A DNA stretch of 64,000 nt from Ostrea edulis (Eukaryota). The notes beneath the pieces are model-generated. The model was not told the origin of the DNA. It worked only from the letters and a program-made list of their open reading frames with translations, and did no database searches. Below are positions 3,877 to 61,743 of this stretch, piece after piece (positions within the stretch are counted from its first letter, which is position 1; each line of letters begins with the position of its first letter). The stretch lies in contig NC_079168.1 in NCBI RefSeq assembly GCF_947568905.1, forward strand, positions 71,858,001 to 71,922,000, read 5' to 3'. The position numbers and the translations under genes were made by a program.

Positions 3877-6800
3877 CACCGTAAATCGTAGGAGAGAGCG
3901 ATATATATATTTTCAGAAGTCTATAACTGAATATGAATCTGCTTTTGCTACAGTTGTACAAATGAGCAGAAAAATTACCACGTGTAGAACCTGATCATCA
4001 GAACAAATTCACTCAAATGTAAAGACATTGTCTGAGGAGGATAGATTAAAATCAGCCTGAAAATCCGCATGTGCAACAGGTGTCCTTCTGTGATCACTGC
4101 TTAGTCGACACCTGACGAGGTACGCTGCACTCTTAGGGGTAACTGATCCATCTCATTCTAACTCTTTATCTGTTGCCTTTAGAAAAGAGTTTTATATTTT
4201 TTCGTCAGCTGTAACTTTTCATGTTACACTTGTGTCTCTTCATATTGCAGTGCAAGAAAATTTTGAAAGACATTCCACTTTGTCATGGAAATTTATTTGT
4301 ACCCAAAAAATTAACTGTAAATTCTTACATTACTGGAGAGAAGTACATTGAAAATAAAAACTAGTGCGTGTACCTGATTTTCAAGATTTACGTCGATACA
4401 ACGAGAACGGAGTATATGTGTTCAACGTGCAAGCTAATTAACCAAACCATGTCCAAGAATTGTAGCCAAAGGAGCTGAGCTAGCAGAAAACTGATAAATT
4501 AAGACACAGAAAATGGTGAACCTATGTTCCAGGCCGACAAATAGCTAAAAGCATTTTTCATGGAGTTATATTGGAAGTTTTGCTATTTCAGAGGATGGGA
4601 TAATACCTACATGATATCTTGTAAAAATCTTCCAGAAATGCGGGTTTTGAAATGGTAAAATCCACACTTATCAAACACATTTAGAAATGATAAAGTACCG
4701 TCTGTTGCTTTTAATGATTTGACAATGATTTTTTTTTCTGCGCGTGTCTGAAAGTCTCCACATATTAAACAAACAAAAACTATACAAATGCAATGTCATC
4801 CCAGATTTCCTATTTTTATTCAATCATGATAAAACACTTTTTTGACATTTCATAAATAATTTTTTTTTCATAAAAAGATCTAAAGATGTAAAAACGATTC
4901 GTCTGTTATCACTGTGGTCAAGTGTGGGCGAAAATGTGAAAGTTCAAGTACAAGTATGTTAACCATGTAACAAGTTTCCAACAAGATGAAATAAACCTCA
5001 CTTGATGTAAATTTACTTGTCTTTGCATCAATTTCATGGCAGATTGGCCAGTGTCCTATTATATTGTATTTCGTAACAGCATACAACGATTTACTAGGCT
5101 AAGCAATTGAGCAATATACCAAACTATTAATTATTTTAATTGACTCACGCGTGTAACCTTATACGGGTGTTTCTGTGTGAAACGCACCGACCAGGTAAAC
5201 CAATTGTAAAGAAAGCACAGTTCAATCGCCATCATTTATCAAGTGGTTTACTTTCAATAGGCAGCAGAAGAGAGGACGTGTAAACAGCTTGACACCTTTA
5301 AGATTTTAATTTACGGCTGGCTTTGAACACAGCCGTATGTGTTTTAGCACCTGCAGTGATTGTAACAAGGACCAAGGTAGTTGACTCTTCATAAACAAAC
5401 ATTAAGAACAAAGTGATCGATTCTGTTAAGGTGACTGTCCCACATTTTGACGAATTTTACCTTAATCTCGCCATCATTAAGGGTCGGGATCATCAACGTA
5501 TCGGCTTACCACGGTCCCATAGTAACACCATTGTATTCTATGCTGCTGTAGGTACTGGAAAAGACAGGGTGTTTCTCGTCATAACTTTTTATTGTGCCAG
5601 GAGGGTCCCAGGGTCACATAACGTTAATGTCACTTTCGTATAGAAAGATGAACGACCATGACTATGCGAATCCGTAAACATGACAATGCTAGACATTTAT
5701 TCCTCAAAAGCAATTTTAAAAGATTCTATAAAGAAAAGGGAAATAAAAGCTTTGCGAATAAAAGATAATGAACCCAGACCACATGTCATGGCTCATCCGG
5801 ACTATGTTTTTGACAAATGTCGTTATATTTAACTAAATTGTATTCACTTAAGTGTATATGTGTTTACGCATGCGCTGCCACAAATTCGAATTTTAACTGA
5901 AATCAACTAATGCGATAAATAAACCACGAAATGATTTCCTTCTATTGAGGGATTGCAGACCCTTTTCTGCATTTTTCAGATTCCAGAAGGATGTGTTTGT
6001 AGTGTGGTGTTCACGTATTTGTCTTTGAAATCTTCTAAAGCTCTTTGTTTTTAAACGTTCTACAACCTTGAAAGAATTAATAGGGAGATAACGCAATGCC
6101 TTGCTTCCTGGTGAACAAAACAAATACAATAGGCAACACTTCCAGATTTTCAATAAAGTTTTATGTTATTTCACCTTGAATTGTCTTTGATAATGTCCAC
6201 GACAACTCAAAGTGACCATAGAAGTGGCCGGTCCAAAGTCTGCAAGATCTCTAGTACCCTGTTGTGCTGTTTATATGACTTTGAAGTTTTCGTGACCTTC
6301 TGAAACTGTTTTGAAAGCCGACTCGATAATGACCACGATCACACACTTACCATTGCAGTGGTCAGTGCAGAGTCCGTGGTGGTTATCAGTATTTGCAGTA
6401 AACTTTCAACAGTTTCTCTCAAGGTCTTCAGATAAGTGGCAATATTTTTCTCTCGTTTCGGTTGAATCACTGTTATCTGTGTTTTTCAGAAGTCTTGATG
6501 TTTATTACAAGAGACCTTGACAATGTCATATCTGTAGTTTGCCACTTTGGAAATCACAAAAACTGGTAATGATCGGTATTTATATATCCATATATTACTC
6601 TTCACCTGCAATCTTCACGGTGTAAATTGTGAAGGGTTGTACTTTTAACGTTTGCTTAAACTTACAGTTACCCCTAAAAAGAGCATCTTCAAAAAGACAT
6701 ATCCTTAAATGTACTGCTGAACAAGAGTAATTTCTGTCGATATATCATAAATGATTCCTATTGACGGCCTTTTATGATTCTTTTATATTACAGTTACACT

Positions 6801-8199
6801 ATCTGCGCTTTATCTTTTATCACAAATTTGGTTATTTCTAACAAAACACACACCAGGAGGTCTGTTGATGTATGGTGTCAAATTCATAAACATATATGCT
6901 AAATATAAATTCTATATATTTACCATGAATTCTGTAAATAAAAGTCACTCAGGAGTCATGCACATAAACTCAACAATGTGTGAAATACGATTTATCAAAT
7001 CATTATGCAAATTACTCAAAACATGAGAGACTTAACAACCTTGTAATTTGTAGAAAAGGTCGATGTTCTGGTCAAACCAATAACAAAAACAACTGCAGGT
7101 CAGCTGGAAAAGACTTTGATGGATCTCTCTTTCTCTCAATTTTAAAAAATAATACGAGATTTTCGCAGATAAGCGCAAGTGGTTGTAAAAATGAACATCA
7201 TTAAATTAGCTTGCTTACAAGTATAGATGTTCAGTTTGTAGTCCTTTGAGTGTTCCTGTAATTTGCATCAATCCTTTCAATGAATACGATTAGGTTTTAA
7301 AAAACAAAACATACATGAATTGAATGGCATGTTTTATTTTATGCGTTTGATTCCATGACATCTGTAGTAGAATTTGAAATCTACATTGTATTCCGATATA
7401 CAGGTGTCATTTTATCAAACAAACTACAAGTGTGTATGTATTCATCTAATTCATTAGAAAATTTTAGAAATTAGTCAACGACACAGCAAGTTGTTCATAG
7501 AATTAACGACAGTTACGACCCCCGCAAATTACGATATTTATCAATCGACAAATGATTTAATGTTTAAAAATATATTTCATTGTTTTCAATAATTCATAAA
7601 ACGTCCCAATTTCATTACCACACTTCTTGTCATTGTTAATTCTCTTTGTAATTGATCAAATGAAGAAAGAAAAAACCCAGAGATCAATGATTAGCCTTGT
7701 TAAGCCCTATAGACCGTGTATAAATGCCTACAATGGAAATGTCGCTTCGACATCTACAATCCATCACCCATCCTCCTACACCAAATGTTGACAAAACAGA
7801 GGACTAACCAGAATCTACACAGGAGACGCAGACGGAAAAAAAAAACCAAGAGACAAAATCTGTTACTAACAACCATAAATACGCCCGCAATAAAACTTCT
7901 TACTCAATCATTTTTATTTATGGTTTACCTTCATTTGTTATTGGCTCCTACAGAAAAGAGTTCCGCTATAGGCAGCGAAACAGTATGACAAGCTGTACTT
8001 TAACTTTATGATTGTGCTTTTTGTATACAAAACTGCAAATAGCATCTTGGATGAATGAAACTCCAAAAATATAACACAAAGAATTTAAATGTTCCCCATG
8101 CTTTTCCTGACTGTTTCATTTAAAATATGTTTGTGTATAACGGGATTCTTTTTCTATTTCGCAGGAGGAATCTATAAGTAAACTGTAGATAATTAGAAG

Positions 8200-8520
8200 A
8201 TGTTTTGGCACTGGATAAAAGATGGCACTCTGCATCGAATCCCAGAGATACGTTTTCATCTCTCATCGCCCACCTACGCCGGGTGTTTAACTGTTTGGTG
8301 TTCCATGCCGTCTGCTTACAATCCCGTTACACTCTATGTTCGTCTCATTCTCACCTAAACTCTTGGCAGCTATATATTGAAACTCGTGCACATCGCATTA
8401 AGAAAAACTCTTAAGCACAATCATTCAACAATTAGATAATTTTCTCAGGAAAACCTTACAATACCCCTGTTGATAAATGGGTCCGGATGTGCGAGAAATG
8501 TGACGAATTGAAACGTCAAC
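8200..8520 (+). mobile_element. Gypsy-like integrase zinc-binding region relic
   Basis: KDGTLHR, then HSH...TRAHRIKK, then VDKWVRMCEKC (8469-8501), across frameshifts. Confidence 0.45.
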
Positions 8521-10003
8521 AATGTGTTCGTACCTATCTTTAATGATAAAAAAAAATCAACAGCAAAAAAGTCAAAAGCTGAAATATTGTTTAGGGCGGA
8601 GGTAAATTTCAACAAAGGAAGGCGATATTATTTGGGAGGGGGTGTATGAAGAGACACTCAAACTGTTCATCGCCGAAAGCATTGCAGTATTGTTAAAACT
8701 CTATCAAACAGCTCAATTTCCTCATCCATTTTAAAATAATTATTTGATGTTTATCTTTATCAGTATGGATTCTGTATCATTTATAAGCTGGATGGAATTA
8801 GCGAAATCTTTAATACATTATGTAAACAAGACCATTTGATAAATAAATCTAAAACGGATTGTATTGACCGTCTCTTTGAAATGTTAGATAAAAGAATCAT
8901 ACAACGAATTAACCTAAATTGGATTGTATGACCCGACTCTTTGATATGATAATAACCGCAACGAAAACACGAATCGGTGAGCTTTGAAAATCATTTTTCC
9001 CAATACATCACAGCAGGGCATCAAGCGTAAAAATTGATACTTCGATCTAAAAATAAGGGTAACGACTTGTACTAGATTTAATTAAATTAAACATTATGAG
9101 CAATATTCTAGGTTATTCATAGCCTATTGAAATATGTCAAAGGACATCTATTCCTGCCTGAACCGGAACCTCCATCATCAAAATCGATGCCTTCAATTAG
9201 GTCGTTGATCTATTTGTAATTTACAAATGACACTACTTTGTATCACCGGTATGTATATAATTAGTAACCCCAAATGTGATTACCCTTGGACTACTTTATA
9301 CCAGTTAATAAATGGCTTATAGTGGTTTATAAATGTGTTGTGAGTGCATTGGAAGGGATGATTCACATCAAAGCTTCACACACTGTTGAAAGCGAAGACG
9401 AGGACGATGAAAGACATTTAAATGAAATAAATACATTTACTTCGTAACACAGACTCGGAGATGTGTTCAGGTTTGTATGAAAAACCCACGGTTTTTTATA
9501 CAAGTCAGTGAGGCATAGCAATCAACCCGCGATAATCGTGTTAACTTTTTTCTCACTTTTCCGCCCCCATCATATTACCATATCTTAACAGTACACAAAA
9601 AATAAAACAGCATATCATATTCGCTCAGATGCATCATTTATTTAAATCAGGATATGAAATGCAAGAGTACAATCAATTAATGGATTTAAATGTCTTCGTG
9701 ACATTACACTTCTTCTGGTTCTACCAGGAACTGGTACACTACTGTGGAAAATCCAATACCACACCTTTTTTTTCAGTACAAACCGAGGTATGCAATCAAA
9801 GTCCGGCACGTAACACGTGGTCATTTCAGGTCATTTGCTTGGGTCAAGTCCAAGTCAGTTCATCATGCGCGCTATCTTTGTCCGATCACCGGTTTTTTTT
9901 TAATTGGTTTAGACCTGTGCTTCATTCGTTCACTAAGGGTTGTGAAACAGACGCATGGGGTATACGTCTTCAATGTGAAACCAAAGTAATAGTGCTATTA
10001 AGT

Positions 10004-10758
10004 TCAGCGTCCTAACACTCGGCGGAAAATGTTCCCCATTCTTTTTCTTTGTTTCAAAGCAGTAAGTACAACGTTCTCAAACACACTCTGTACGCTCTGC
10101 AAGTCCGCCGAGGAACACTCTAGGTACCGATCCGCCCCGATTTCTTTGGCCATTTTTTGTCCCTCTTCAGTAGTGACACTGTCCCCTCCCGGAGTGACCT
10201 CCTCCATGCTGACACTGTCCACTCCATGGGAGGATCGGGTATCCGTTTGGGTAGCCACTACGATAATTGGAACGCGTTTTCCTAGAAAGTCTTTGACTTC
10301 AGGGGCCCAGAATTCCCGGACACTCTCAAAGGAGTCCCTGTCGGACACCGAGAAACAGAGCAGGAGGACTTCGCTGTCCTTGTAGCTGAAGGACCGCAGT
10401 TCAGTGTACTCATGCTGAAAAACACACACACAAAACCCATTAATCTAAGCAATAAGAACAAGTTTGATGTACTTCATAGTTATAAACTTGAAGCAAAACT
10501 AAATCTTTATTGTTTTCTTTGGATATAGAAAATAAGTACTTAATCGACGCTTACCTCTCCGGCGGAATCAAAGATGCTGACCACATATTTGTCCCCTCCC
10601 ACTGTGGATTTACCGGCATAGTTATTAAAGACGGTAGACACATACTCCTGGGGCATAGTTTGTTGGGAGAACACCTCCGACAGACATGTTTTCCCCACCA
10701 TCCCGTCGCCGATCACCGTGCAGCTAATAGGCTTTTTCATGTCGCTTAGATGGACCAT
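10004..10758 (-). CDS. Atypical Rho-family GTPase paralogue 1 (Cdc42/RhoL-like), 204 aa; exons 10758-10555 and 10414-10004
   Basis: Spliced ORF has G1 GDGMVGKT, switch I YVSTVFNNY, G3 DSAGE, G4 ATQTD, G5 ECSS. The 140-nt intron runs GTAAGC...TTTCAG, phase 0. Ends RKRMGNIFRRVLGR-stop with no CAAX. Confidence 0.93.
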
Positions 10759-12170
10759 CGTATTCCCCTTAACAAAATGAACGCAGAGTCGATTGAATAA
10801 TGATAAAAATAGACAAGATCGCGCAGTTTTTAAACGTAGTCTAAGTCATGGGATTCGCTGGCAGCCAATCATGTGCGGGCTCACGCGGCTCTCTGATTAC
10901 CTGTATAGATTTTTACCTTTGTAACGAGGTGTGACAGTGTTTGTATTTCCTATCGTATTCACGATAATCCTGATTCTGGAACTTCCGTTTACGTTCGGAT
11001 TAATGACGAAAGACACAAACAATTACCGAATGTCACTAAAAATTACACGTTATTTCGCGAGAGTTTCTGATTTAGAACTCTGAGTTATCAGAAAGAAATG
11101 CAATACCTTTATCATTAATATTCTATCAATACATCGGTAAAAGTATTATCTACAATCATGTGTTTTGTTGCACGTTTAAAATTCATATTTATTTGTTTCG
11201 TCCCAGATTTTTGCACTAATTACGCAACGTCACATTTTCTTTATATTTTATTTAATATATATATATATATATATAAATCTGTGTGTGTGTTTCGTCCTAT
11301 ATTTTGCATTAATTACGCAATTCTTTAACAAATTACAAATCAGAAATAAGCTATGATTGGCACTATTAGATTTTACATGCTTCCTTGCACTTTTGTTTAT
11401 ATAATACGGTAAATGTACATGTTTTGCAGTTGGTGCTATTAATATATTCAATTATTTAAGCATTGGGGATTAACTGCTTATAAAGTATAAAAATCCTTGA
11501 AAACAATCAAGATTTCCTTTCAGTTTTAATTTGCCTTTATTTACACTCTTTAAAATCACCACCAAATGCATCTAATACTGCTTGGTCCCAGCCTGAGGTC
11601 ATTGACCGGAAGGCAAGACTTCGGACGGTTCCTATATACCAAAGTTTGACAATGGCATTGACCTCCGATTTGGTCAGTCTTTTTTTTTAATGACATTCAA
11701 ATATTTTTCTCCTCCAAGTTGTTTGATTACCGAGAAATTAGAAATCAGGTCAAGTTTTTTTTTTTCGTGGAATCAACAGCCTTCGTGCATGCATTATCAC
11801 CTAGGTAAACACAGATGGCGCTTGTTCGTACCTGTATTAGCGTTCTCTAAAAGTTGTATACATAATGTGTATCCTTGATGTAATAAAGTAGGACGGAAGA
11901 TAGATACGCATTCTGAGTATTATTATAAATCATCAAATAAGATAATTACATTAATAGTAAGAATTACCTCCTGTTGAAGTAGAAAGAAGTGGATATTTTA
12001 CATCAACCAATTATCCTATAGCACCGTCTCTTGCTAACCCCCCACCCCCAGATTATAATCTACAGACACAGTCTTATTAAGTTTTACATTAATTTGTGGA
12101 TAGGGGTACAGGTGTTTTGCATGGACTTAAATAGTTAATTTAGATATGTGAGGTATATTAGGTTTTTTTT

Positions 12171-16242: not shown

Positions 16243-16916
16243 TCAACGTCCGACAATTCTTTTTATAACACGGAATCGTCCTTTCTTTTGCACTAAAACA
16301 GCGGACACGACACTTTCAAATATCTGCTGGATTCGAACTTTGTCGGTCGAAGAACACTCAATAAAAGAGTGTCCACCAACCTCTCTGCAAAACTCAAAGC
16401 CTTCCTCAAATGTCACGTGACCGGAGTCATCTTCTCGTCTGAGGTCCACATGTGTGGCCACAAGAATAATGTTCTGCCTTTTGTTCATATTTCGTATGGT
16501 GGGTATCCAGAAGTCTTTTACATTTCTGAACGACTCCCGATCTACTGCACTGTAGCAGACGACAAACACTTCTCTGCTGCTATTTGTTGTCTTCGTGAAG
16601 TCTGTTTGGTACTACAACATGAACAAGACTGTTATATAAATTTTAGTAATTCTTGTGAAAGGTTGCAATGATAAAACTCAAATTAACGCATTCACGTTAA
16701 CTCTTTGCAAATAGTAGTATTTACCTCTCCACCAAAATCCGTAATGTTGACCAAGTACTTGTCTCCATAGACCGATACCACGGCAGTGTACTTCTCCATC
16801 ACCGTCGCCATGTATCCGTCAGGGGGCACCTGGCCAACGAACGACTGGATCAGGCTCGATTTACCGACCATCCCATCTCCGACTACAGAACAACTAACAG
16901 GCTTTGACACAACCAT
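16243..16916 (-). CDS. Atypical Rho-family GTPase paralogue 2, 186 aa; exons 16916-16725 and 16611-16243
   Basis: G1 GDGMVGKS, switch I YMATVMEKY, G3 DFGGE, G4 ATHVD, G5 ECSS. The 113-nt intron runs GTAAAT...TTGTAG and this acceptor keeps the frame (YQTDFTK...EVFVVCYS). First true ATG is at 16916 (the ORF-track start is TTG). Ends KKGRFRVIKRIVGR-stop. Confidence 0.9.
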
Positions 16917-24198: not shown

Positions 24199-24973
24199 TC
24201 ACCGGTTGTTCTTTCCCTGATTGGTTAAGATTTTCTTATTTCCCAAAGTGAGCTGAAGAGAAAGACCAGCCACGATCTGGAAGACCTTAGTAATTCCTAC
24301 TTTCTGGACAGCAGAACATTCCACAAAGGCAGATATATTGAATTCATTGCACAAATTCCTTCCCTCTTCTTCTGTGACGTGGTTTGGGTTATTCTCACAT
24401 CGCAAGTCTGTGTGTGTTGCTGCAAGCACAATAGGAATCTTTGGGTTGATGTTTCGGACCATTGGTAACCAGAAAGATTTCGCGTTGTGGAAAGAATCTT
24501 TATCCACCACATTGTAGCAGACGACTGTTACTAGATTACTGGACTGACAGTTTGGTCTCACGTGCAGATCCTCCTGTACAATGAAAAATACATTCTATAA
24601 GATATCCACTTTCATTTTGGAAGAAGGTACAAGGACAAATATAAATAAACACCATCTGACATTAAGGAAGCCAAGCTTTGAATAATTCACATTTTGATGT
24701 TCTCTCCCGATATATAAAAACACTGCTATGTAGTAATTCTGTAAGAAAATGTGCTCTTACCTCAATAGAGAGATCCGTTATATGCAGTGTATGCTTGGCC
24801 CCCGCCAGACTGAGGTGAGTGCTATAGTTATCCATGAATACTGTGGCTGTATAGTTGGGGGACAGCGTATATCCCAGAAATGAGCGAATAATGGATGTTT
24901 TACCAACCATCCCATCCCCAAGCATTACACAGCGGAGGCTGCTTCCCTTTCCGGTGTTTACCATGGTTTTCAT
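24199..24973 (-). CDS. Atypical Rho-family GTPase paralogue 3 with degenerate G3 motif, 195 aa; exons 24973-24761 and 24573-24199
   Basis: G1 GDGMVGKT, switch I YTATVFMDNY, G3 DLSIE, G4 ATHTD, G5 ECSA. The 187-nt intron runs GTAAGA...GTACAG. The ORF is open but the C-terminus (GNKKILTNQGKNNR) diverges from the other four. Confidence 0.87.
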
Positions 24974-42590: not shown

Positions 42591-43256
42591 ATGGTTGTTG
42601 CAATGCTGAAATCTGTGCAGTGTACAGTAATCGGGGACGGTTTTGTTGGAAAGTCCTGCCTGGTGCAGAAAATCGCGGATGGTCAGTTTCATGAGGAATA
42701 TATCGCCACTCTTAAGGACGACTACAATACCAATATATTGATCAATGGTGACCACTATGACCTCAGTATAACTGATATCGCTGGAGAGGTAAGGAACGAA
42801 CAGACCATACTTGTAGTTTGTAGTCATAGTTAAATTAAACTTCGTAAAACTTTGAAAAGCAGACTTTGCATTACAATATACATTTCCTCTTTGCAGCACG
42901 AAGATTTATCTTCTGTAGAAATCCCGGACGTCTACATCGTCTGCTTCAGCTTAGCGGACAAAAATTCCATGGACAGTGTAGAAGACTTCTGGGTCCCAAA
43001 AGTTAGAGCTCTTAGAAGGGACGTTCCAATTGTTCTTGTTGGGACCCAGACGGATGTGAGAAAATCTTTACATAATGGACATATCACAACCGAAAAAGGG
43101 CAAAGGTTAGCAAAAAGACTTGGAGTGGATTACTACGTAGAGTGTTCAGCGAAAGAGAACTCTGGGATTCAAGAAACGTTTCTAAAAGCTGTACAGGCTA
43201 AAGTAAGAAATGACAAGAGGAAATTAAACATTATCAAGAGAATTCTTGACAGATGA
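42591..43256 (+). CDS. Atypical Rho-family GTPase paralogue 4, 185 aa; exons 42591-42788 and 42897-43256
   Basis: G1 GDGFVGKS, switch [11 protein letters not shown]3 DIAGE, G4 GTQTD, G5 ECSAK. The 108-nt intron runs GTAAGG...TTGCAG. Ends [13 protein letters not shown]-stop. Confidence 0.93.
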
Positions 43257-61075: not shown

Positions 61076-61743
61076 ATGGTTGCTGCTGCAGAGAAAGCTG
61101 TTCATTGCACTGTTGTTGGTGATGGATTTGTGGGAAAGTCGAGTCTTGTTCAGAAGTTTGTGCGTGGACAATTCAACCCGGAATATGTCGCCACGCTAAA
61201 GGATGAATACACCGCTAGAGTGTCTACAAATGGAGATGTGTATCGCCTGCATGTCACCGACATTGCTGGAGAGGTAAGAACATTGCACATCTTCATTTCT
61301 TTTCGTCATGATTAAGATGATGAGTTTTCGCATGCTCTACACAGTTTACTAGTACTAATGTATATGATTTATATCTTGAATAGCACGAAGACATGTCCTC
61401 TCTACCAACACCCGAAATCTTCATCGTCTGCTTCAGCTTAGTGGACAGAGATTCGCTGGATAGCGTCGAAAACTTCTGGATGCCTAAAATTCGCTCCGTG
61501 GGAAAATATATCCCTATCGTACTTGTTGGTACCCAGTCAGACATGCGAAATGCAACTGAAAATGGACATATATCGGCTGAACAAGGACGTAAAATAGCTA
61601 AAAGTTTGGGAACTGAATACTACCTAGAGTGCTCCGCTAAAACGGATATGAAAATTCGGGAAGTATTTGAAAAGACTGTACATGCCAGAATTCGCCATTG
61701 CAAGAAAAAAGTGAACATTATAAAACGCATGTTTAGTCGTTGA
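61076..61743 (+). CDS. Atypical Rho-family GTPase paralogue 5, 185 aa; exons 61076-61273 and 61384-61743
   Basis: G1 GDGFVGKS, switch [11 protein letters not shown]3 DIAGE, G4 GTQSD, G5 ECSAK. The 110-nt intron runs GTAAGA...GAATAG with a CTAAT branch-like motif; start context is CAAAATG. Ends [13 protein letters not shown]-stop. Closest to paralogue 4 (identical exon lengths, 198 and 360 nt). Confidence 0.93.

What the first reader, a model, noticed from the sequence alone, without database searches (positions are those of the whole stretch)
10004..10050. CAAX replaced by a conserved basic amphipathic C-terminal tail ending in Arg
Seen: tails [41 protein letters not shown] and [13 protein letters not shown] share polybasic + two hydrophobic + two basic + two hydrophobic + x + R-stop, although the core domains diverge widely. 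All five proteins end in Arg and none has a Cys in its last 13 residues. Known: Rit/Rin and RGK GTPases reach membranes through lipid-independent polybasic/hydrophobic tails. Inference: a prenylation-independent membrane anchor that would also escape RhoGDI.
Basis: partly seen in the sequence, partly recalled or inferred. Interest (0 to 1): 0.75.

Follow-up and report, generated by a model that had tools for sequence, protein, structure and literature searches.

The report
Mollusc Rho GTPases with lipid-free basic tail
Five neighbouring oyster genes encode Cdc42-like switch proteins that truly lack the usual lipid-attachment signal. Instead they end in a short basic, half-greasy helix that is conserved across bivalves and snails and probably holds them on membranes, though this is untested.

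Summary
The window carries five two-exon Ras-superfamily genes. Four end in [KR]3-x(1-3)-hh-[KR][KR]-hh-x-Arg-stop (h = hydrophobic). The fifth (g3) ends in Arg but has lost the motif. None has a Cys in its last 13 residues; g5 has one at -14.

RNA contigs confirm the g1 intron. They run unbroken through the stop codon into a ~390-nt 3'UTR with AATAAA and a poly(A) tail, so g1 has no hidden CAAX exon.

The tail is not oyster-specific. It is the signature of a Cdc42/TC10-derived subfamily found in all major bivalve orders and in many gastropods, with consensus LK[YF]RKKK[ST]NIhKRh[LF]GR-stop. The subfamily also lacks the Rho insert. Of the 88 best profile hits, none has CAAX, 78 have the motif, and in 58 it ends exactly two residues before the C-terminus. 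A tree built with the tails removed is compatible with a single origin.

AlphaFold2 draws the tail as a helical continuation of alpha5. Its amphipathicity is moderate and similar to the MinD membrane-targeting helix.

Membrane anchoring and escape from RhoGDI are plausible but remain inference. An NLS or a protein-docking motif are live rivals.

I found no paper describing the family, only one incidental remark. I rate it a new variant of a known kind, of moderate interest.

The parts
10004..10050 (-). g1 C-terminal tail RKRMGNIFRRVLGR (10007-10048) plus TGA stop (10004-10006): the reported feature
   Evidence: RNA contigs cross it without a joint; the last 26 aa are identical in Crassostrea orthologues P0213/P0236
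10004..10414 (-). g1 exon 2 (switch II to stop)
   Evidence: Pfam PF00071, 6.4e-19; acceptor TTTTTCAG; exon junction seen in RNA
10415..10554 (-). g1 intron, 140 nt, phase 0, GT..AG
   Evidence: joint 10414->10555, 'skips 140, CT..AC', in runs X1 and X2
10555..10758 (-). g1 exon 1 coding part (Met to DSAGE; P-loop GDGMVGKT)
   Evidence: RNA contigs reach 10787
9615..10003 (-). g1 3'UTR, contiguous with the stop; AATAAA at 9642-9637; poly(A) added at ~9615
   Evidence: contig X12 covers 9615-10185 with a 22-T loose end before 9615; X1, X11 and X2 contigs also cross the stop; signal located
16243..16916 (-). g2: exon 1 16725-16916, exon 2 16243-16611; 186 aa; tail KKGRFRVIKRIVGR at 16246-16287
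   Evidence: orthologues P0262 and P0035
24199..24973 (-). g3: exon 1 24761-24973, exon 2 24199-24573; 195 aa; divergent copy (DLSIE, no Gly60); the tail has lost the motif but still ends in Arg
   Evidence: end branch 1.13 in the tree
42591..43256 (+). g4: exon 1 42591-42788, exon 2 42897-43256; 185 aa; tail [13 protein letters not shown] at 43215-43253
   Evidence: orthologues P0002 and P0007, 70% identity, same length and tail
61076..61743 (+). g5: exon 1 61076-61273, exon 2 61384-61743; 185 aa; tail [13 protein letters not shown] at 61702-61740; Cys at -14
   Evidence: orthologues P0008 and P0010

Best explanation
The five genes belong to a mollusc-wide subfamily of atypical Rho GTPases that descends from the Cdc42/TC10 branch. 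No paper in the library searched describes this subfamily.

Shown: the subfamily has lost both the CAAX box and the Rho insert. Its proteins end in a fixed-length module: a polybasic collar (RKKK), a polar capping residue (Asn/Ser), a two-turn segment h-h-[KR]-[KR]-h-h, then Gly/x and a terminal Arg/Lys.

Shown: the stop after the Arg is the true end of the g1 mRNA.

Predicted: the module is a helical continuation of alpha5, with four hydrophobic side chains on one face and the basic residues around them.

Inferred as the most likely function: reversible, lipid-independent binding to anionic membranes. The polybasic collar would give electrostatic attraction and the hydrophobic face shallow insertion, as in RIT/RGK polybasic tails and the MinD C-terminal membrane-targeting helix. 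Lacking a geranylgeranyl group, the proteins would not be extracted by RhoGDI.

In the window's copies Gln61 is replaced by Glu, and in g4/g5 switch II is four residues shorter. Control of these proteins may therefore rest more on localisation or expression than on a classical GAP/GDI cycle.

The confidence of 0.5 refers to the functional mechanism. The descriptive part (real genes, true C-terminus of g1, conserved family signature) I hold at about 0.95.
For: - Gene models and true C-terminus. The intron joint is confirmed, contigs cross the stop, and there is a poly(A) tail and AATAAA.
- g1 is under purifying selection: 10 synonymous against 3 non-synonymous differences from another organism's transcripts, none in the tail.
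- Closest solved relatives are TC10 (2e-39) and Cdc42 (~1e-37). The alignments show a 4-residue switch II deletion and a ~9-residue deletion of the insert. The fold is Rho-like, TM ~0.8. The TQxD G4 motif matches Cdc42/TC10.
- Tail conservation. Of 88 top hits, 0 have CAAX and 78 have the motif; in 58 it ends two residues before the C-terminus.
- On a G-domain tree built with the last 22 residues removed, the tail-bearing proteins lie on one side of a branch (1 change; 0 of 500 shuffles as low).
- AlphaFold2 models alpha5 and the tail as one helix. In P0002 it spans 157-183 with tail pLDDT 70-81. In the g1 orthologue P0213 it spans 160-189 with tail pLDDT ~71.
- The last 10 residues have muH 0.58-0.74, H 0.29-0.44 and charge +2 to +4, against 0.55/0.40/+3 for the MinD MTS.
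- The same genome's canonical Rho genes keep CAAX, and it has a RhoGDI gene.
- RhoGDI-1/2 bind only geranylgeranylated proteins (PMC8253491). RIT binds lipids through a basic C-terminal extension (PMC13565119).
Against: - No experiment or localisation data exist for any member.
- For 11-residue windows the hydrophobic moment is not significantly higher than composition-matched shuffles (p 0.04-0.31).
- The hydrophobic face has only four residues. One MinD-type helix alone is reported as too weak for membrane binding without dimerisation (PMC8155659).
- The RKKK collar also fits a classical monopartite NLS.
- The AlphaFold2 tail confidence is only moderate, and a helix drawn in isolation says nothing about membranes.
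- RNA evidence was laid only for g1. For g2-g5 the C-terminus rests on the genomic stop and on orthologous gene models.
- The MinD sequence used for comparison came from memory.
Confidence: 0.5

Rival explanations
1. The tail is mainly a nuclear-localisation or importin-binding signal. RKKK / KRK followed by KR forms a classical basic NLS on a small unlipidated protein, as the Rac1 polybasic region can do.
For: An invariant basic cluster occupies tail positions 176-181 (class conservation 0.84-1.0). There is no lipid signal. The match to K-[KR]-x-[KR] is my own reading of the sequence.
Against: An NLS does not explain the strictly conserved h-h-x-x-h-h pattern (hydrophobic class ~1.0 at four positions). 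It also does not explain the fixed distance of two residues to the C-terminus (58 of 78).
Confidence: 0.17
2. The tail is a protein-docking helix. It could be a basic amphipathic calmodulin-type site, an effector or adaptor site, a dimerisation element, or an autoinhibitory element that packs on the G domain, rather than a lipid binder.
For: The predicted amphipathic helix is contiguous with alpha5. RGK tails combine calmodulin-binding and polybasic sites (PMC4081519). Some paralogues carry RRxS in the tail, which would suit regulated binding.
Against: The segment is only about 8-10 residues, shorter than typical calmodulin targets. No partner is known. AlphaFold2 extends the helix away from the core rather than folding it back, but I had only the secondary-structure summary and no coordinates.
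Confidence: 0.2
3. Annotation or assembly artefact, or decaying pseudogenes: the real proteins carry CAAX on an unseen exon, or the genes are not functional.
For: Only g1 was checked against RNA. g3 is highly divergent: it lacks Gly60, has lost the motif and sits on a long branch.
Against: g1 transcripts are spliced, polyadenylated and cross the stop unspliced. Synonymous differences outnumber non-synonymous 10 to 3. Gene models of the same length with the same ending occur in dozens of mollusc genomes. All five ORFs are intact and have canonical splice sites.
Confidence: 0.03

Closest known systems
Cdc42 / TC10 (RhoQ) / TCL (RhoJ) branch of the Rho family
   Same: These are the best sequence matches among solved structures (TC10 2e-39, Cdc42 ~1e-37). 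The predicted fold is Rho-like. They share the TQxD G4 motif, and g1 keeps a Cdc42-like effector loop (YVSTVFNNY). Automatic annotation names the family 'cdc42 homolog / RhoJ-like / RhoQ-like'.
   Different: The family has no CAAX box and no Rho insert (~9-residue deletion). The window's copies have Glu for Gln61, and g4/g5 have a switch II that is four residues shorter. The C-terminus is a conserved helix rather than a hypervariable region ending in a lipidated Cys.
RIT1/RIT2 and RGK (Rad, Rem, Gem/Kir) GTPases
   Same: They are Ras-superfamily GTPases without a functional CAAX that reach membranes through basic C-terminal extensions binding anionic lipids (PMC13565119; PMC4081519).
   Different: They belong to a different branch (Ras family, not Rho). 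Their tails are ~35-40 residues and are described as unstructured polybasic regions, in RGK with calmodulin and 14-3-3 sites and a conserved Cys-7 motif. Here the module is ~16 residues, predicted helical, and has a fixed hydrophobic pattern that ends two residues before the C-terminus.
MinD C-terminal membrane-targeting sequence (bacterial ParA/MinD ATPases)
   Same: It is an extreme C-terminal short amphipathic helix on a P-loop NTPase, with an h-h-K-R-h-h-G pattern and near-identical muH, H and charge. It binds membranes without lipid modification (PMC8155659).
   Different: It is an unrelated protein class, so this is analogy only. A single MinD MTS is too weak and needs ATP-driven dimerisation. 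The mollusc tail adds a 4-5-residue polybasic collar, and no dimerisation is known. The MinD sequence used was recalled from memory.
Other CAAX-less or atypical Rho proteins (RhoBTB, Miro, RhoU/RhoV)
   Same: These are Rho relatives that depart from the prenylation/GDI cycle (PMC8253491).
   Different: RhoBTB and Miro are large multidomain proteins, and RhoU/V are palmitoylated on C-terminal Cys. The mollusc proteins are ~185-205-residue single-domain proteins with no C-terminal Cys.

Membership tests
Ras superfamily small GTPase | G domain with G1-G5 motifs (Pfam PF00071) | tested here: met
   Both exons of g1, g4, g5 and g3 hit PF00071 (E 1e-10 to 6e-19). P-loop GDGxVGK[ST], Thr35, DxxG and [TQ/TH]xD are present. 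g3 lacks Gly60.
Rho family (Cdc42/TC10 branch) | Closest sequence and structure relatives are Rho GTPases | tested here: met
   The PDB profile search is topped by TC10, Cdc42 and Rac1. Foldseek top hits are RhoA/Rac/Cdc42, TM 0.79-0.84.
Rho family (Cdc42/TC10 branch) | Rho insert helix between G4 and G5 | tested here: not met
   HMMER alignments to TC10/Cdc42 show a ~9-residue gap exactly at the insert. The AlphaFold2 models have no helix of four or more residues between beta5 and alpha4. The insert is short in all family members aligned.
Rho family (Cdc42/TC10 branch) | C-terminal CAAX box (prenylation) | tested here: not met
   There is no Cys in the last 13 residues of any of the five. Of the 88 best family hits, none has CAAX. 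No CAAX exon appears in g1 RNA. Canonical Rho genes of the same genome do end in CAAX.
Rho family (Cdc42/TC10 branch) | Catalytic Gln61 | tested here: not met
   All five window copies have Glu (DSAGE, DFGGE, DLSIE, DIAGE x2). Many more conserved family members keep Gln (DSAGQ/DTAGQ), so the loss is secondary.
RIT/RGK-type lipid-independent tail | Polybasic C-terminal extension without CAAX | tested here: met
   Net charge is +6 to +8 over the last 18 residues.
RIT/RGK-type lipid-independent tail | Homology to the RIT/RGK G domains and tails | tested here: not met
   The G domain is Rho-like. The tail is ~16 residues and predicted helical, against ~35 unstructured residues in RIT (PMC13565119).
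RIT/RGK-type lipid-independent tail | Demonstrated binding to anionic lipids or the plasma membrane | not testable with these tools
   This needs liposome or localisation experiments.
MinD-type C-terminal amphipathic membrane-targeting helix (analogy) | Short amphipathic helix at the extreme C-terminus with a hydrophobic face flanked by basic residues | tested here: met
   The hydrophobic residues sit at 200-340 degrees and the basic ones at 40-180 degrees. muH is 0.58-0.74 over the last 10 residues, and the helix is predicted. muH is not significantly above shuffles.
Classical monopartite NLS | K-[KR]-x-[KR] basic cluster | tested here: inconclusive
   The sequence pattern is present (RKKK/KRK). 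Function cannot be judged from sequence.

The most novel reading that the evidence does not exclude
Molluscs possess a large, previously unrecognised Rho subfamily that works wholly outside the prenylation/RhoGDI cycle. A MinD-like terminal amphipathic helix plus a polybasic collar would give fast, reversible membrane binding. In some paralogues this binding would be switched by phosphorylation at RRxS sites inside the tail. The tandem expansion in bivalves, with rapidly diverging switch surfaces, would reflect diversification of effector or pathogen-facing specificity.
Probability: 0.25. Interest if true: 0.7.

Novelty: new variant of a known kind. Interest (0 to 1): 0.55.

Why it matters
Rho GTPases are textbook examples of lipid-anchored switches cycled by RhoGDI. 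This is a whole subfamily, conserved across bivalves and gastropods and expanded to at least 11 tandem copies in this oyster, that has replaced CAAX with a fixed basic amphipathic helix.

If the tail proves to be an anchor, it would add a new membrane-targeting solution to the Rho family. It would also offer a compact, lipid-free targeting peptide to test.

The published bivalve Rho survey lists 12 C. gigas genes and none of this type (PMC4669188), so it is incomplete. Automatic names such as 'cdc42 homolog' hide a distinct family.

Tried and rejected
1. Hidden CAAX exon: rejected for g1. RNA contigs cross the stop and end in poly(A), and there is no coverage or joint in the 4.4 kb downstream.
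2. 'Oyster-specific novelty': rejected. The family is found in all major bivalve orders and many gastropods.
3. Hemichordate (Ptychodera, Saccoglossus, Glandiceps) and Lingula CAAX-less proteins as members: rejected. They nest among canonical Cdc42 on the far side of a 99* branch, so they look like an independent CAAX loss.
4. Hydrophobic moment as a statistical proof: the values are high for these proteins (rank 4-16 of ~175 windows) but not significant against shuffles (p 0.04-0.31). I treat it as descriptive only.
5. Logan contig L014, carrying a 99% identical g4 fragment: it still contains the intron, so it says nothing about the transcript.
6. Logan ORFs P0003/P0006/P0014 that run past the Arg (…NRW…): these read the TGA stop as Trp. 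I take this for a gene-caller genetic-code artefact, not a longer isoform.
7. The read laying cap is one call, so g2-g5 could not be checked against RNA.
8. No complex-prediction job was sent, because I make no binding claim that a pass would change.
9. Tail conservation figures from alignment A3 are partly circular, because its rows were picked by a tail pattern. The less biased count is, taken over the ranked profile hits.

Full report
**What is in the window.** The window has about 35% G+C. Its only large coding features are five small GTPase genes.
- Each gene has two coding exons separated by a 108-187-nt phase-0 intron. The intron starts with GTAAG/GTAAA directly after the codon for the residue that is Gln61 in Ras/Rho, and it ends in a canonical AG.
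- Gene models: g1 (-) 10758-10555 / 10414-10004; g2 (-) 16916-16725 / 16611-16243; g3 (-) 24973-24761 / 24573-24199; g4 (+) 42591-42788 / 42897-43256; g5 (+) 61076-61273 / 61384-61743.
- Both exons hit Pfam Ras, PF00071.
- Pairwise identity among the five is 31-58%.

**The observation.**
Each is followed directly by a stop.
- g3 ends in ...LGNKKILTNQGKNNR. It keeps the terminal Arg but not the motif. It also lacks Gly60 (DLSIE) and sits on a long branch.
- No protein has a Cys in its last 13 residues. g5 has one at -14.

**Is the Arg the real C-terminus?** I laid contigs from four runs (two studies) on window 5200-11100.
- Two runs contain the joint 10414->10555 (skips 140, GT..AG on the minus strand). 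This confirms the predicted intron and shows that these contigs derive from spliced RNA.
- Contigs 9615-10185, 9696-10111, 9735-10322 and 9779-10302 run without a break through the stop at 10004-10006.
- One contig carries a 22-T loose end before 9615, which is a poly(A) tail on the minus strand. An AATAAA lies at 9642-9637.
- There is no coverage and no joint anywhere from 5200 to 9600.
- For g1, therefore, a downstream CAAX exon is excluded as the main form. Contigs can miss rare isoforms.
- The transcripts from the second organism differ from the window at 13 CDS positions, 10 synonymous and 3 non-synonymous, none in the tail. This indicates purifying selection.
Their endings rest on the genomic stops and on same-length gene models in other oysters.

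**What the proteins are.**
- A profile of seven oyster orthologues finds TC10/RhoQ (2e-39) and Cdc42 (~1e-37) as the best solved relatives.
- Those alignments show a 4-residue deletion in switch II (g4/g5 type) and a ~9-residue deletion where the Rho insert should be.
- AlphaFold2 models match RhoA/Rac/Cdc42 structures with TM ~0.8.
- The G4 motif is TQxD, as in Cdc42 and TC10 (seen in the aligned chains).
- All five window copies have Glu in place of Gln61.
- Canonical Rho genes elsewhere in the same genome keep CAAX endings: CAIL, CVTL, CLLL, CKIF, CKIL, CAIS, CTIL, CCFL.
- A RhoGDI gene is present on contig C4.

**The family is much wider than the window.**
- In this genome the cluster continues on both sides, to at least 11 copies over about 112 kb. 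Flanking tails include KKRKANILKRVLGR, SRRKSSLFKRVLGR, RKRRSSLIKRVFSR and KKTKRRRSPVNLVRRLLG.
- The exhaustive representative search and a word search with a 16-member profile recover the same ending in bivalves of all major orders: Solemya, Tegillarca, Pinctada, Mytilus, scallops, unionids, Mya, Mactra, Mercenaria, Dreissena and oysters.
- They recover it also in gastropods: Lottia, Patella, Haliotis, Batillaria, Biomphalaria, Bradybaena, Elysia, Aplysia and Candidula.
- Of the 88 best hits (E <= 1e-61), none has CAAX and 78 carry the motif. In 58 of those it ends exactly two residues before the C-terminus.
- The ten exceptions are two fused gene models, one truncated model, four gastropod proteins in which the motif is followed by a ~25-residue extension, two one-substitution variants, and one hemichordate protein.
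- The consensus is L-K-[YF]-R-K-K-K-[ST]-N-I-h-K-R-h-[LF]-G-R-stop.
- The g1 orthologues in Crassostrea ('RhoJ-like', 191 aa) are 92% identical overall and identical over the last 26 residues.
- Many of the more conserved members keep DxAGQ and a full-length switch II. The tail is therefore older than the Gln61-to-Glu change.

**Single origin?** I built a tree from G domains after cutting off the last 22 residues of every row (quick IQ-TREE, 67 rows).
- The mollusc tail-bearing proteins fall on one side of a branch (1 change; 0 of 500 label shuffles as low).
- A 99* branch separates them from the canonical CAAX proteins. One long-branched Pecten row is the exception and lowers the support for strict monophyly to 55.
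- g1 groups with conserved heterodont sequences.
- g2-g5 and the flanking copies belong to a fast-evolving pteriomorph clade (95*).
- CAAX-less proteins from hemichordates and Lingula nest inside canonical Cdc42 and look like an independent loss.
- The root is not inferred, and no AU test was run.

**Anatomy of the tail.**
- AlphaFold2 predicts alpha5 and the tail as one continuous helix. In the g4-type orthologue P0002 it spans 157-183, with tail blocks at pLDDT 81 and 70.
- In the g1 orthologue P0213, with an 87-sequence alignment, it spans 160-189, with residues 171-180 at pLDDT 94 and 181-190 at 71.
- On a helical wheel the four hydrophobic residues occupy a 140-degree arc. The basic residues occupy the opposite side.
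- Over the last 10 residues muH is 0.58-0.74, mean hydrophobicity 0.29-0.44 and charge +2 to +4. Over the last 18 residues the charge is +6 to +8.
- These values match those I computed for the E. coli MinD membrane-targeting sequence (0.55 / 0.40 / +3).
- The moment is among the highest in each protein, but it is not significantly above composition-matched shuffles. 'Amphipathic' is a fair description, not a statistical proof.
- The conserved Asn/Ser before the hydrophobic pair and the Gly after it are plausible helix caps. This is my inference.

**Mechanism.** I commit to lipid-independent, electrostatic-plus-hydrophobic binding to anionic membranes as the most likely role, at about 0.5.
- For: the CAAX loss occurred in a family whose relatives all need membranes. 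A polybasic collar sits next to a conserved hydrophobic face at the very C-terminus. There are precedents in RIT (PMC13565119), RGK (PMC4081519) and MinD (PMC8155659).
- Against: there are no experimental data. The hydrophobic face is short. A single MinD helix is reported as insufficient without dimerisation (PMC8155659). The collar also fits an NLS.
- 'Escapes RhoGDI' follows from the reported finding that RhoGDI-1/2 bind only geranylgeranylated proteins (PMC8253491). The altered switch II supports it too: g1 has Glu where Cdc42 has Arg66, by my alignment of the motif. It remains an inference, and the same paper reports RhoGDI-3 binding to non-prenylated RhoV.

**Prior knowledge.**
- The bivalve Rho survey lists 12 C. 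gigas genes. None has the 185-191 aa, two-exon architecture (PMC4669188).
[quoted passage not shown] This fits the ...RRVLGR ending of the g1 orthologue and is an incidental sighting, not a description.
- Other full-text searches returned nothing on such a family. The library is incomplete, so absence of a description is not proof.

**Verdict.**
- The feature is a new variant of a known kind: an atypical, CAAX-less Rho subfamily with a conserved terminal basic amphipathic helix.
- Interest is moderate (0.55).

Noticed in passing
G000:C5:71849747-71961472 (loci L001-L004), both sides of the window: The gene cluster extends beyond the window to at least 11 copies over ~112 kb. It includes a near-identical inverted pair in L001 (3393-4092 + and 9373-8644 -) with a GDKKVGKS P-loop and DCSSE in place of DxxGQ. 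L004 holds a copy that appears truncated before the tail.
   Followed up: partly
window 24199-24973 (g3): This is a divergent copy. Gly60 is lost (DLSIE), the tail motif is lost (…KKILTNQGKNNR) and it has the longest branch in the tree, yet the ORF and splice sites are intact. It may be decaying or neofunctionalised.
   Followed up: partly
window ~10110-10190 (g1 exon 2, loop at the place of the Rho insert): g1 has 13 extra residues relative to its 191-aa Crassostrea orthologue (…RSSHGVDSVSMEEVTPGGDSVTTEEG… against …RSDLGGDVSTEEG…). It looks like a short internal tandem duplication (DSVSMEE / DSVTTEE). RNA contigs cover it without indels.
   Followed up: partly
L003 6095-6346 and downstream exon (C5:~71.95 Mb); also P0026/P0188: One flanking paralogue keeps Gln61 (DLSGQ) and a full-length switch II while carrying the same tail (RKRRSSLIKRVFSR). 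The tail therefore predates the Gln-to-Glu change seen in all five window copies.
   Followed up: partly
tails of L002 (SRRKSSLF), L003 (RKRRSSLI), Mytilus P0043 (KKRRRSSLL), Biomphalaria P0057 (KRKKRSSSF): Several paralogues have an RRxS/RKxS basophilic-kinase consensus between the polybasic collar and the hydrophobic pair, where the others have Asn. This could be a phospho-electrostatic switch.
   Followed up: no
g5 (window ~61699-61701), L002_1, L003_1: A Cys sits just upstream of the polybasic collar (…HCKKK…, …TCSRRK…, …KCRKRR…) at -14 to -15. About 8 of 105 family tails have a Cys at -14 to -17. Palmitoylation there cannot be excluded.
   Followed up: no
L005 (C5:73.96 Mb), L008 (C5:20.1 Mb), L011 (C6:18.38 Mb): Three further CAAX-less Rho-like genes lie elsewhere in the genome with different basic/hydrophobic endings: …KKKRQTWKSFKNAFKRHTMKI, …LLTIFKKIFCTTCINKNE and …GRKGYLRTLKGIFIK.
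   Followed up: no
proteins P0003, P0006, P0014 (Logan contigs of Crassostrea-like samples): These predicted ORFs continue past the terminal Arg as …NRWTRY…, which reads the TGA stop as Trp. I take this for a gene-caller genetic-code artefact that inflates protein lengths in the database.
   Followed up: partly
P0070, P0272, P0279, P0288 (hemichordates) and P0269 (Lingula): This is a separate group of Cdc42-like proteins without CAAX. They end in …RRW[FL]SCLSPK… and nest within canonical Cdc42 in the tree, apparently an independent CAAX loss.
   Followed up: partly
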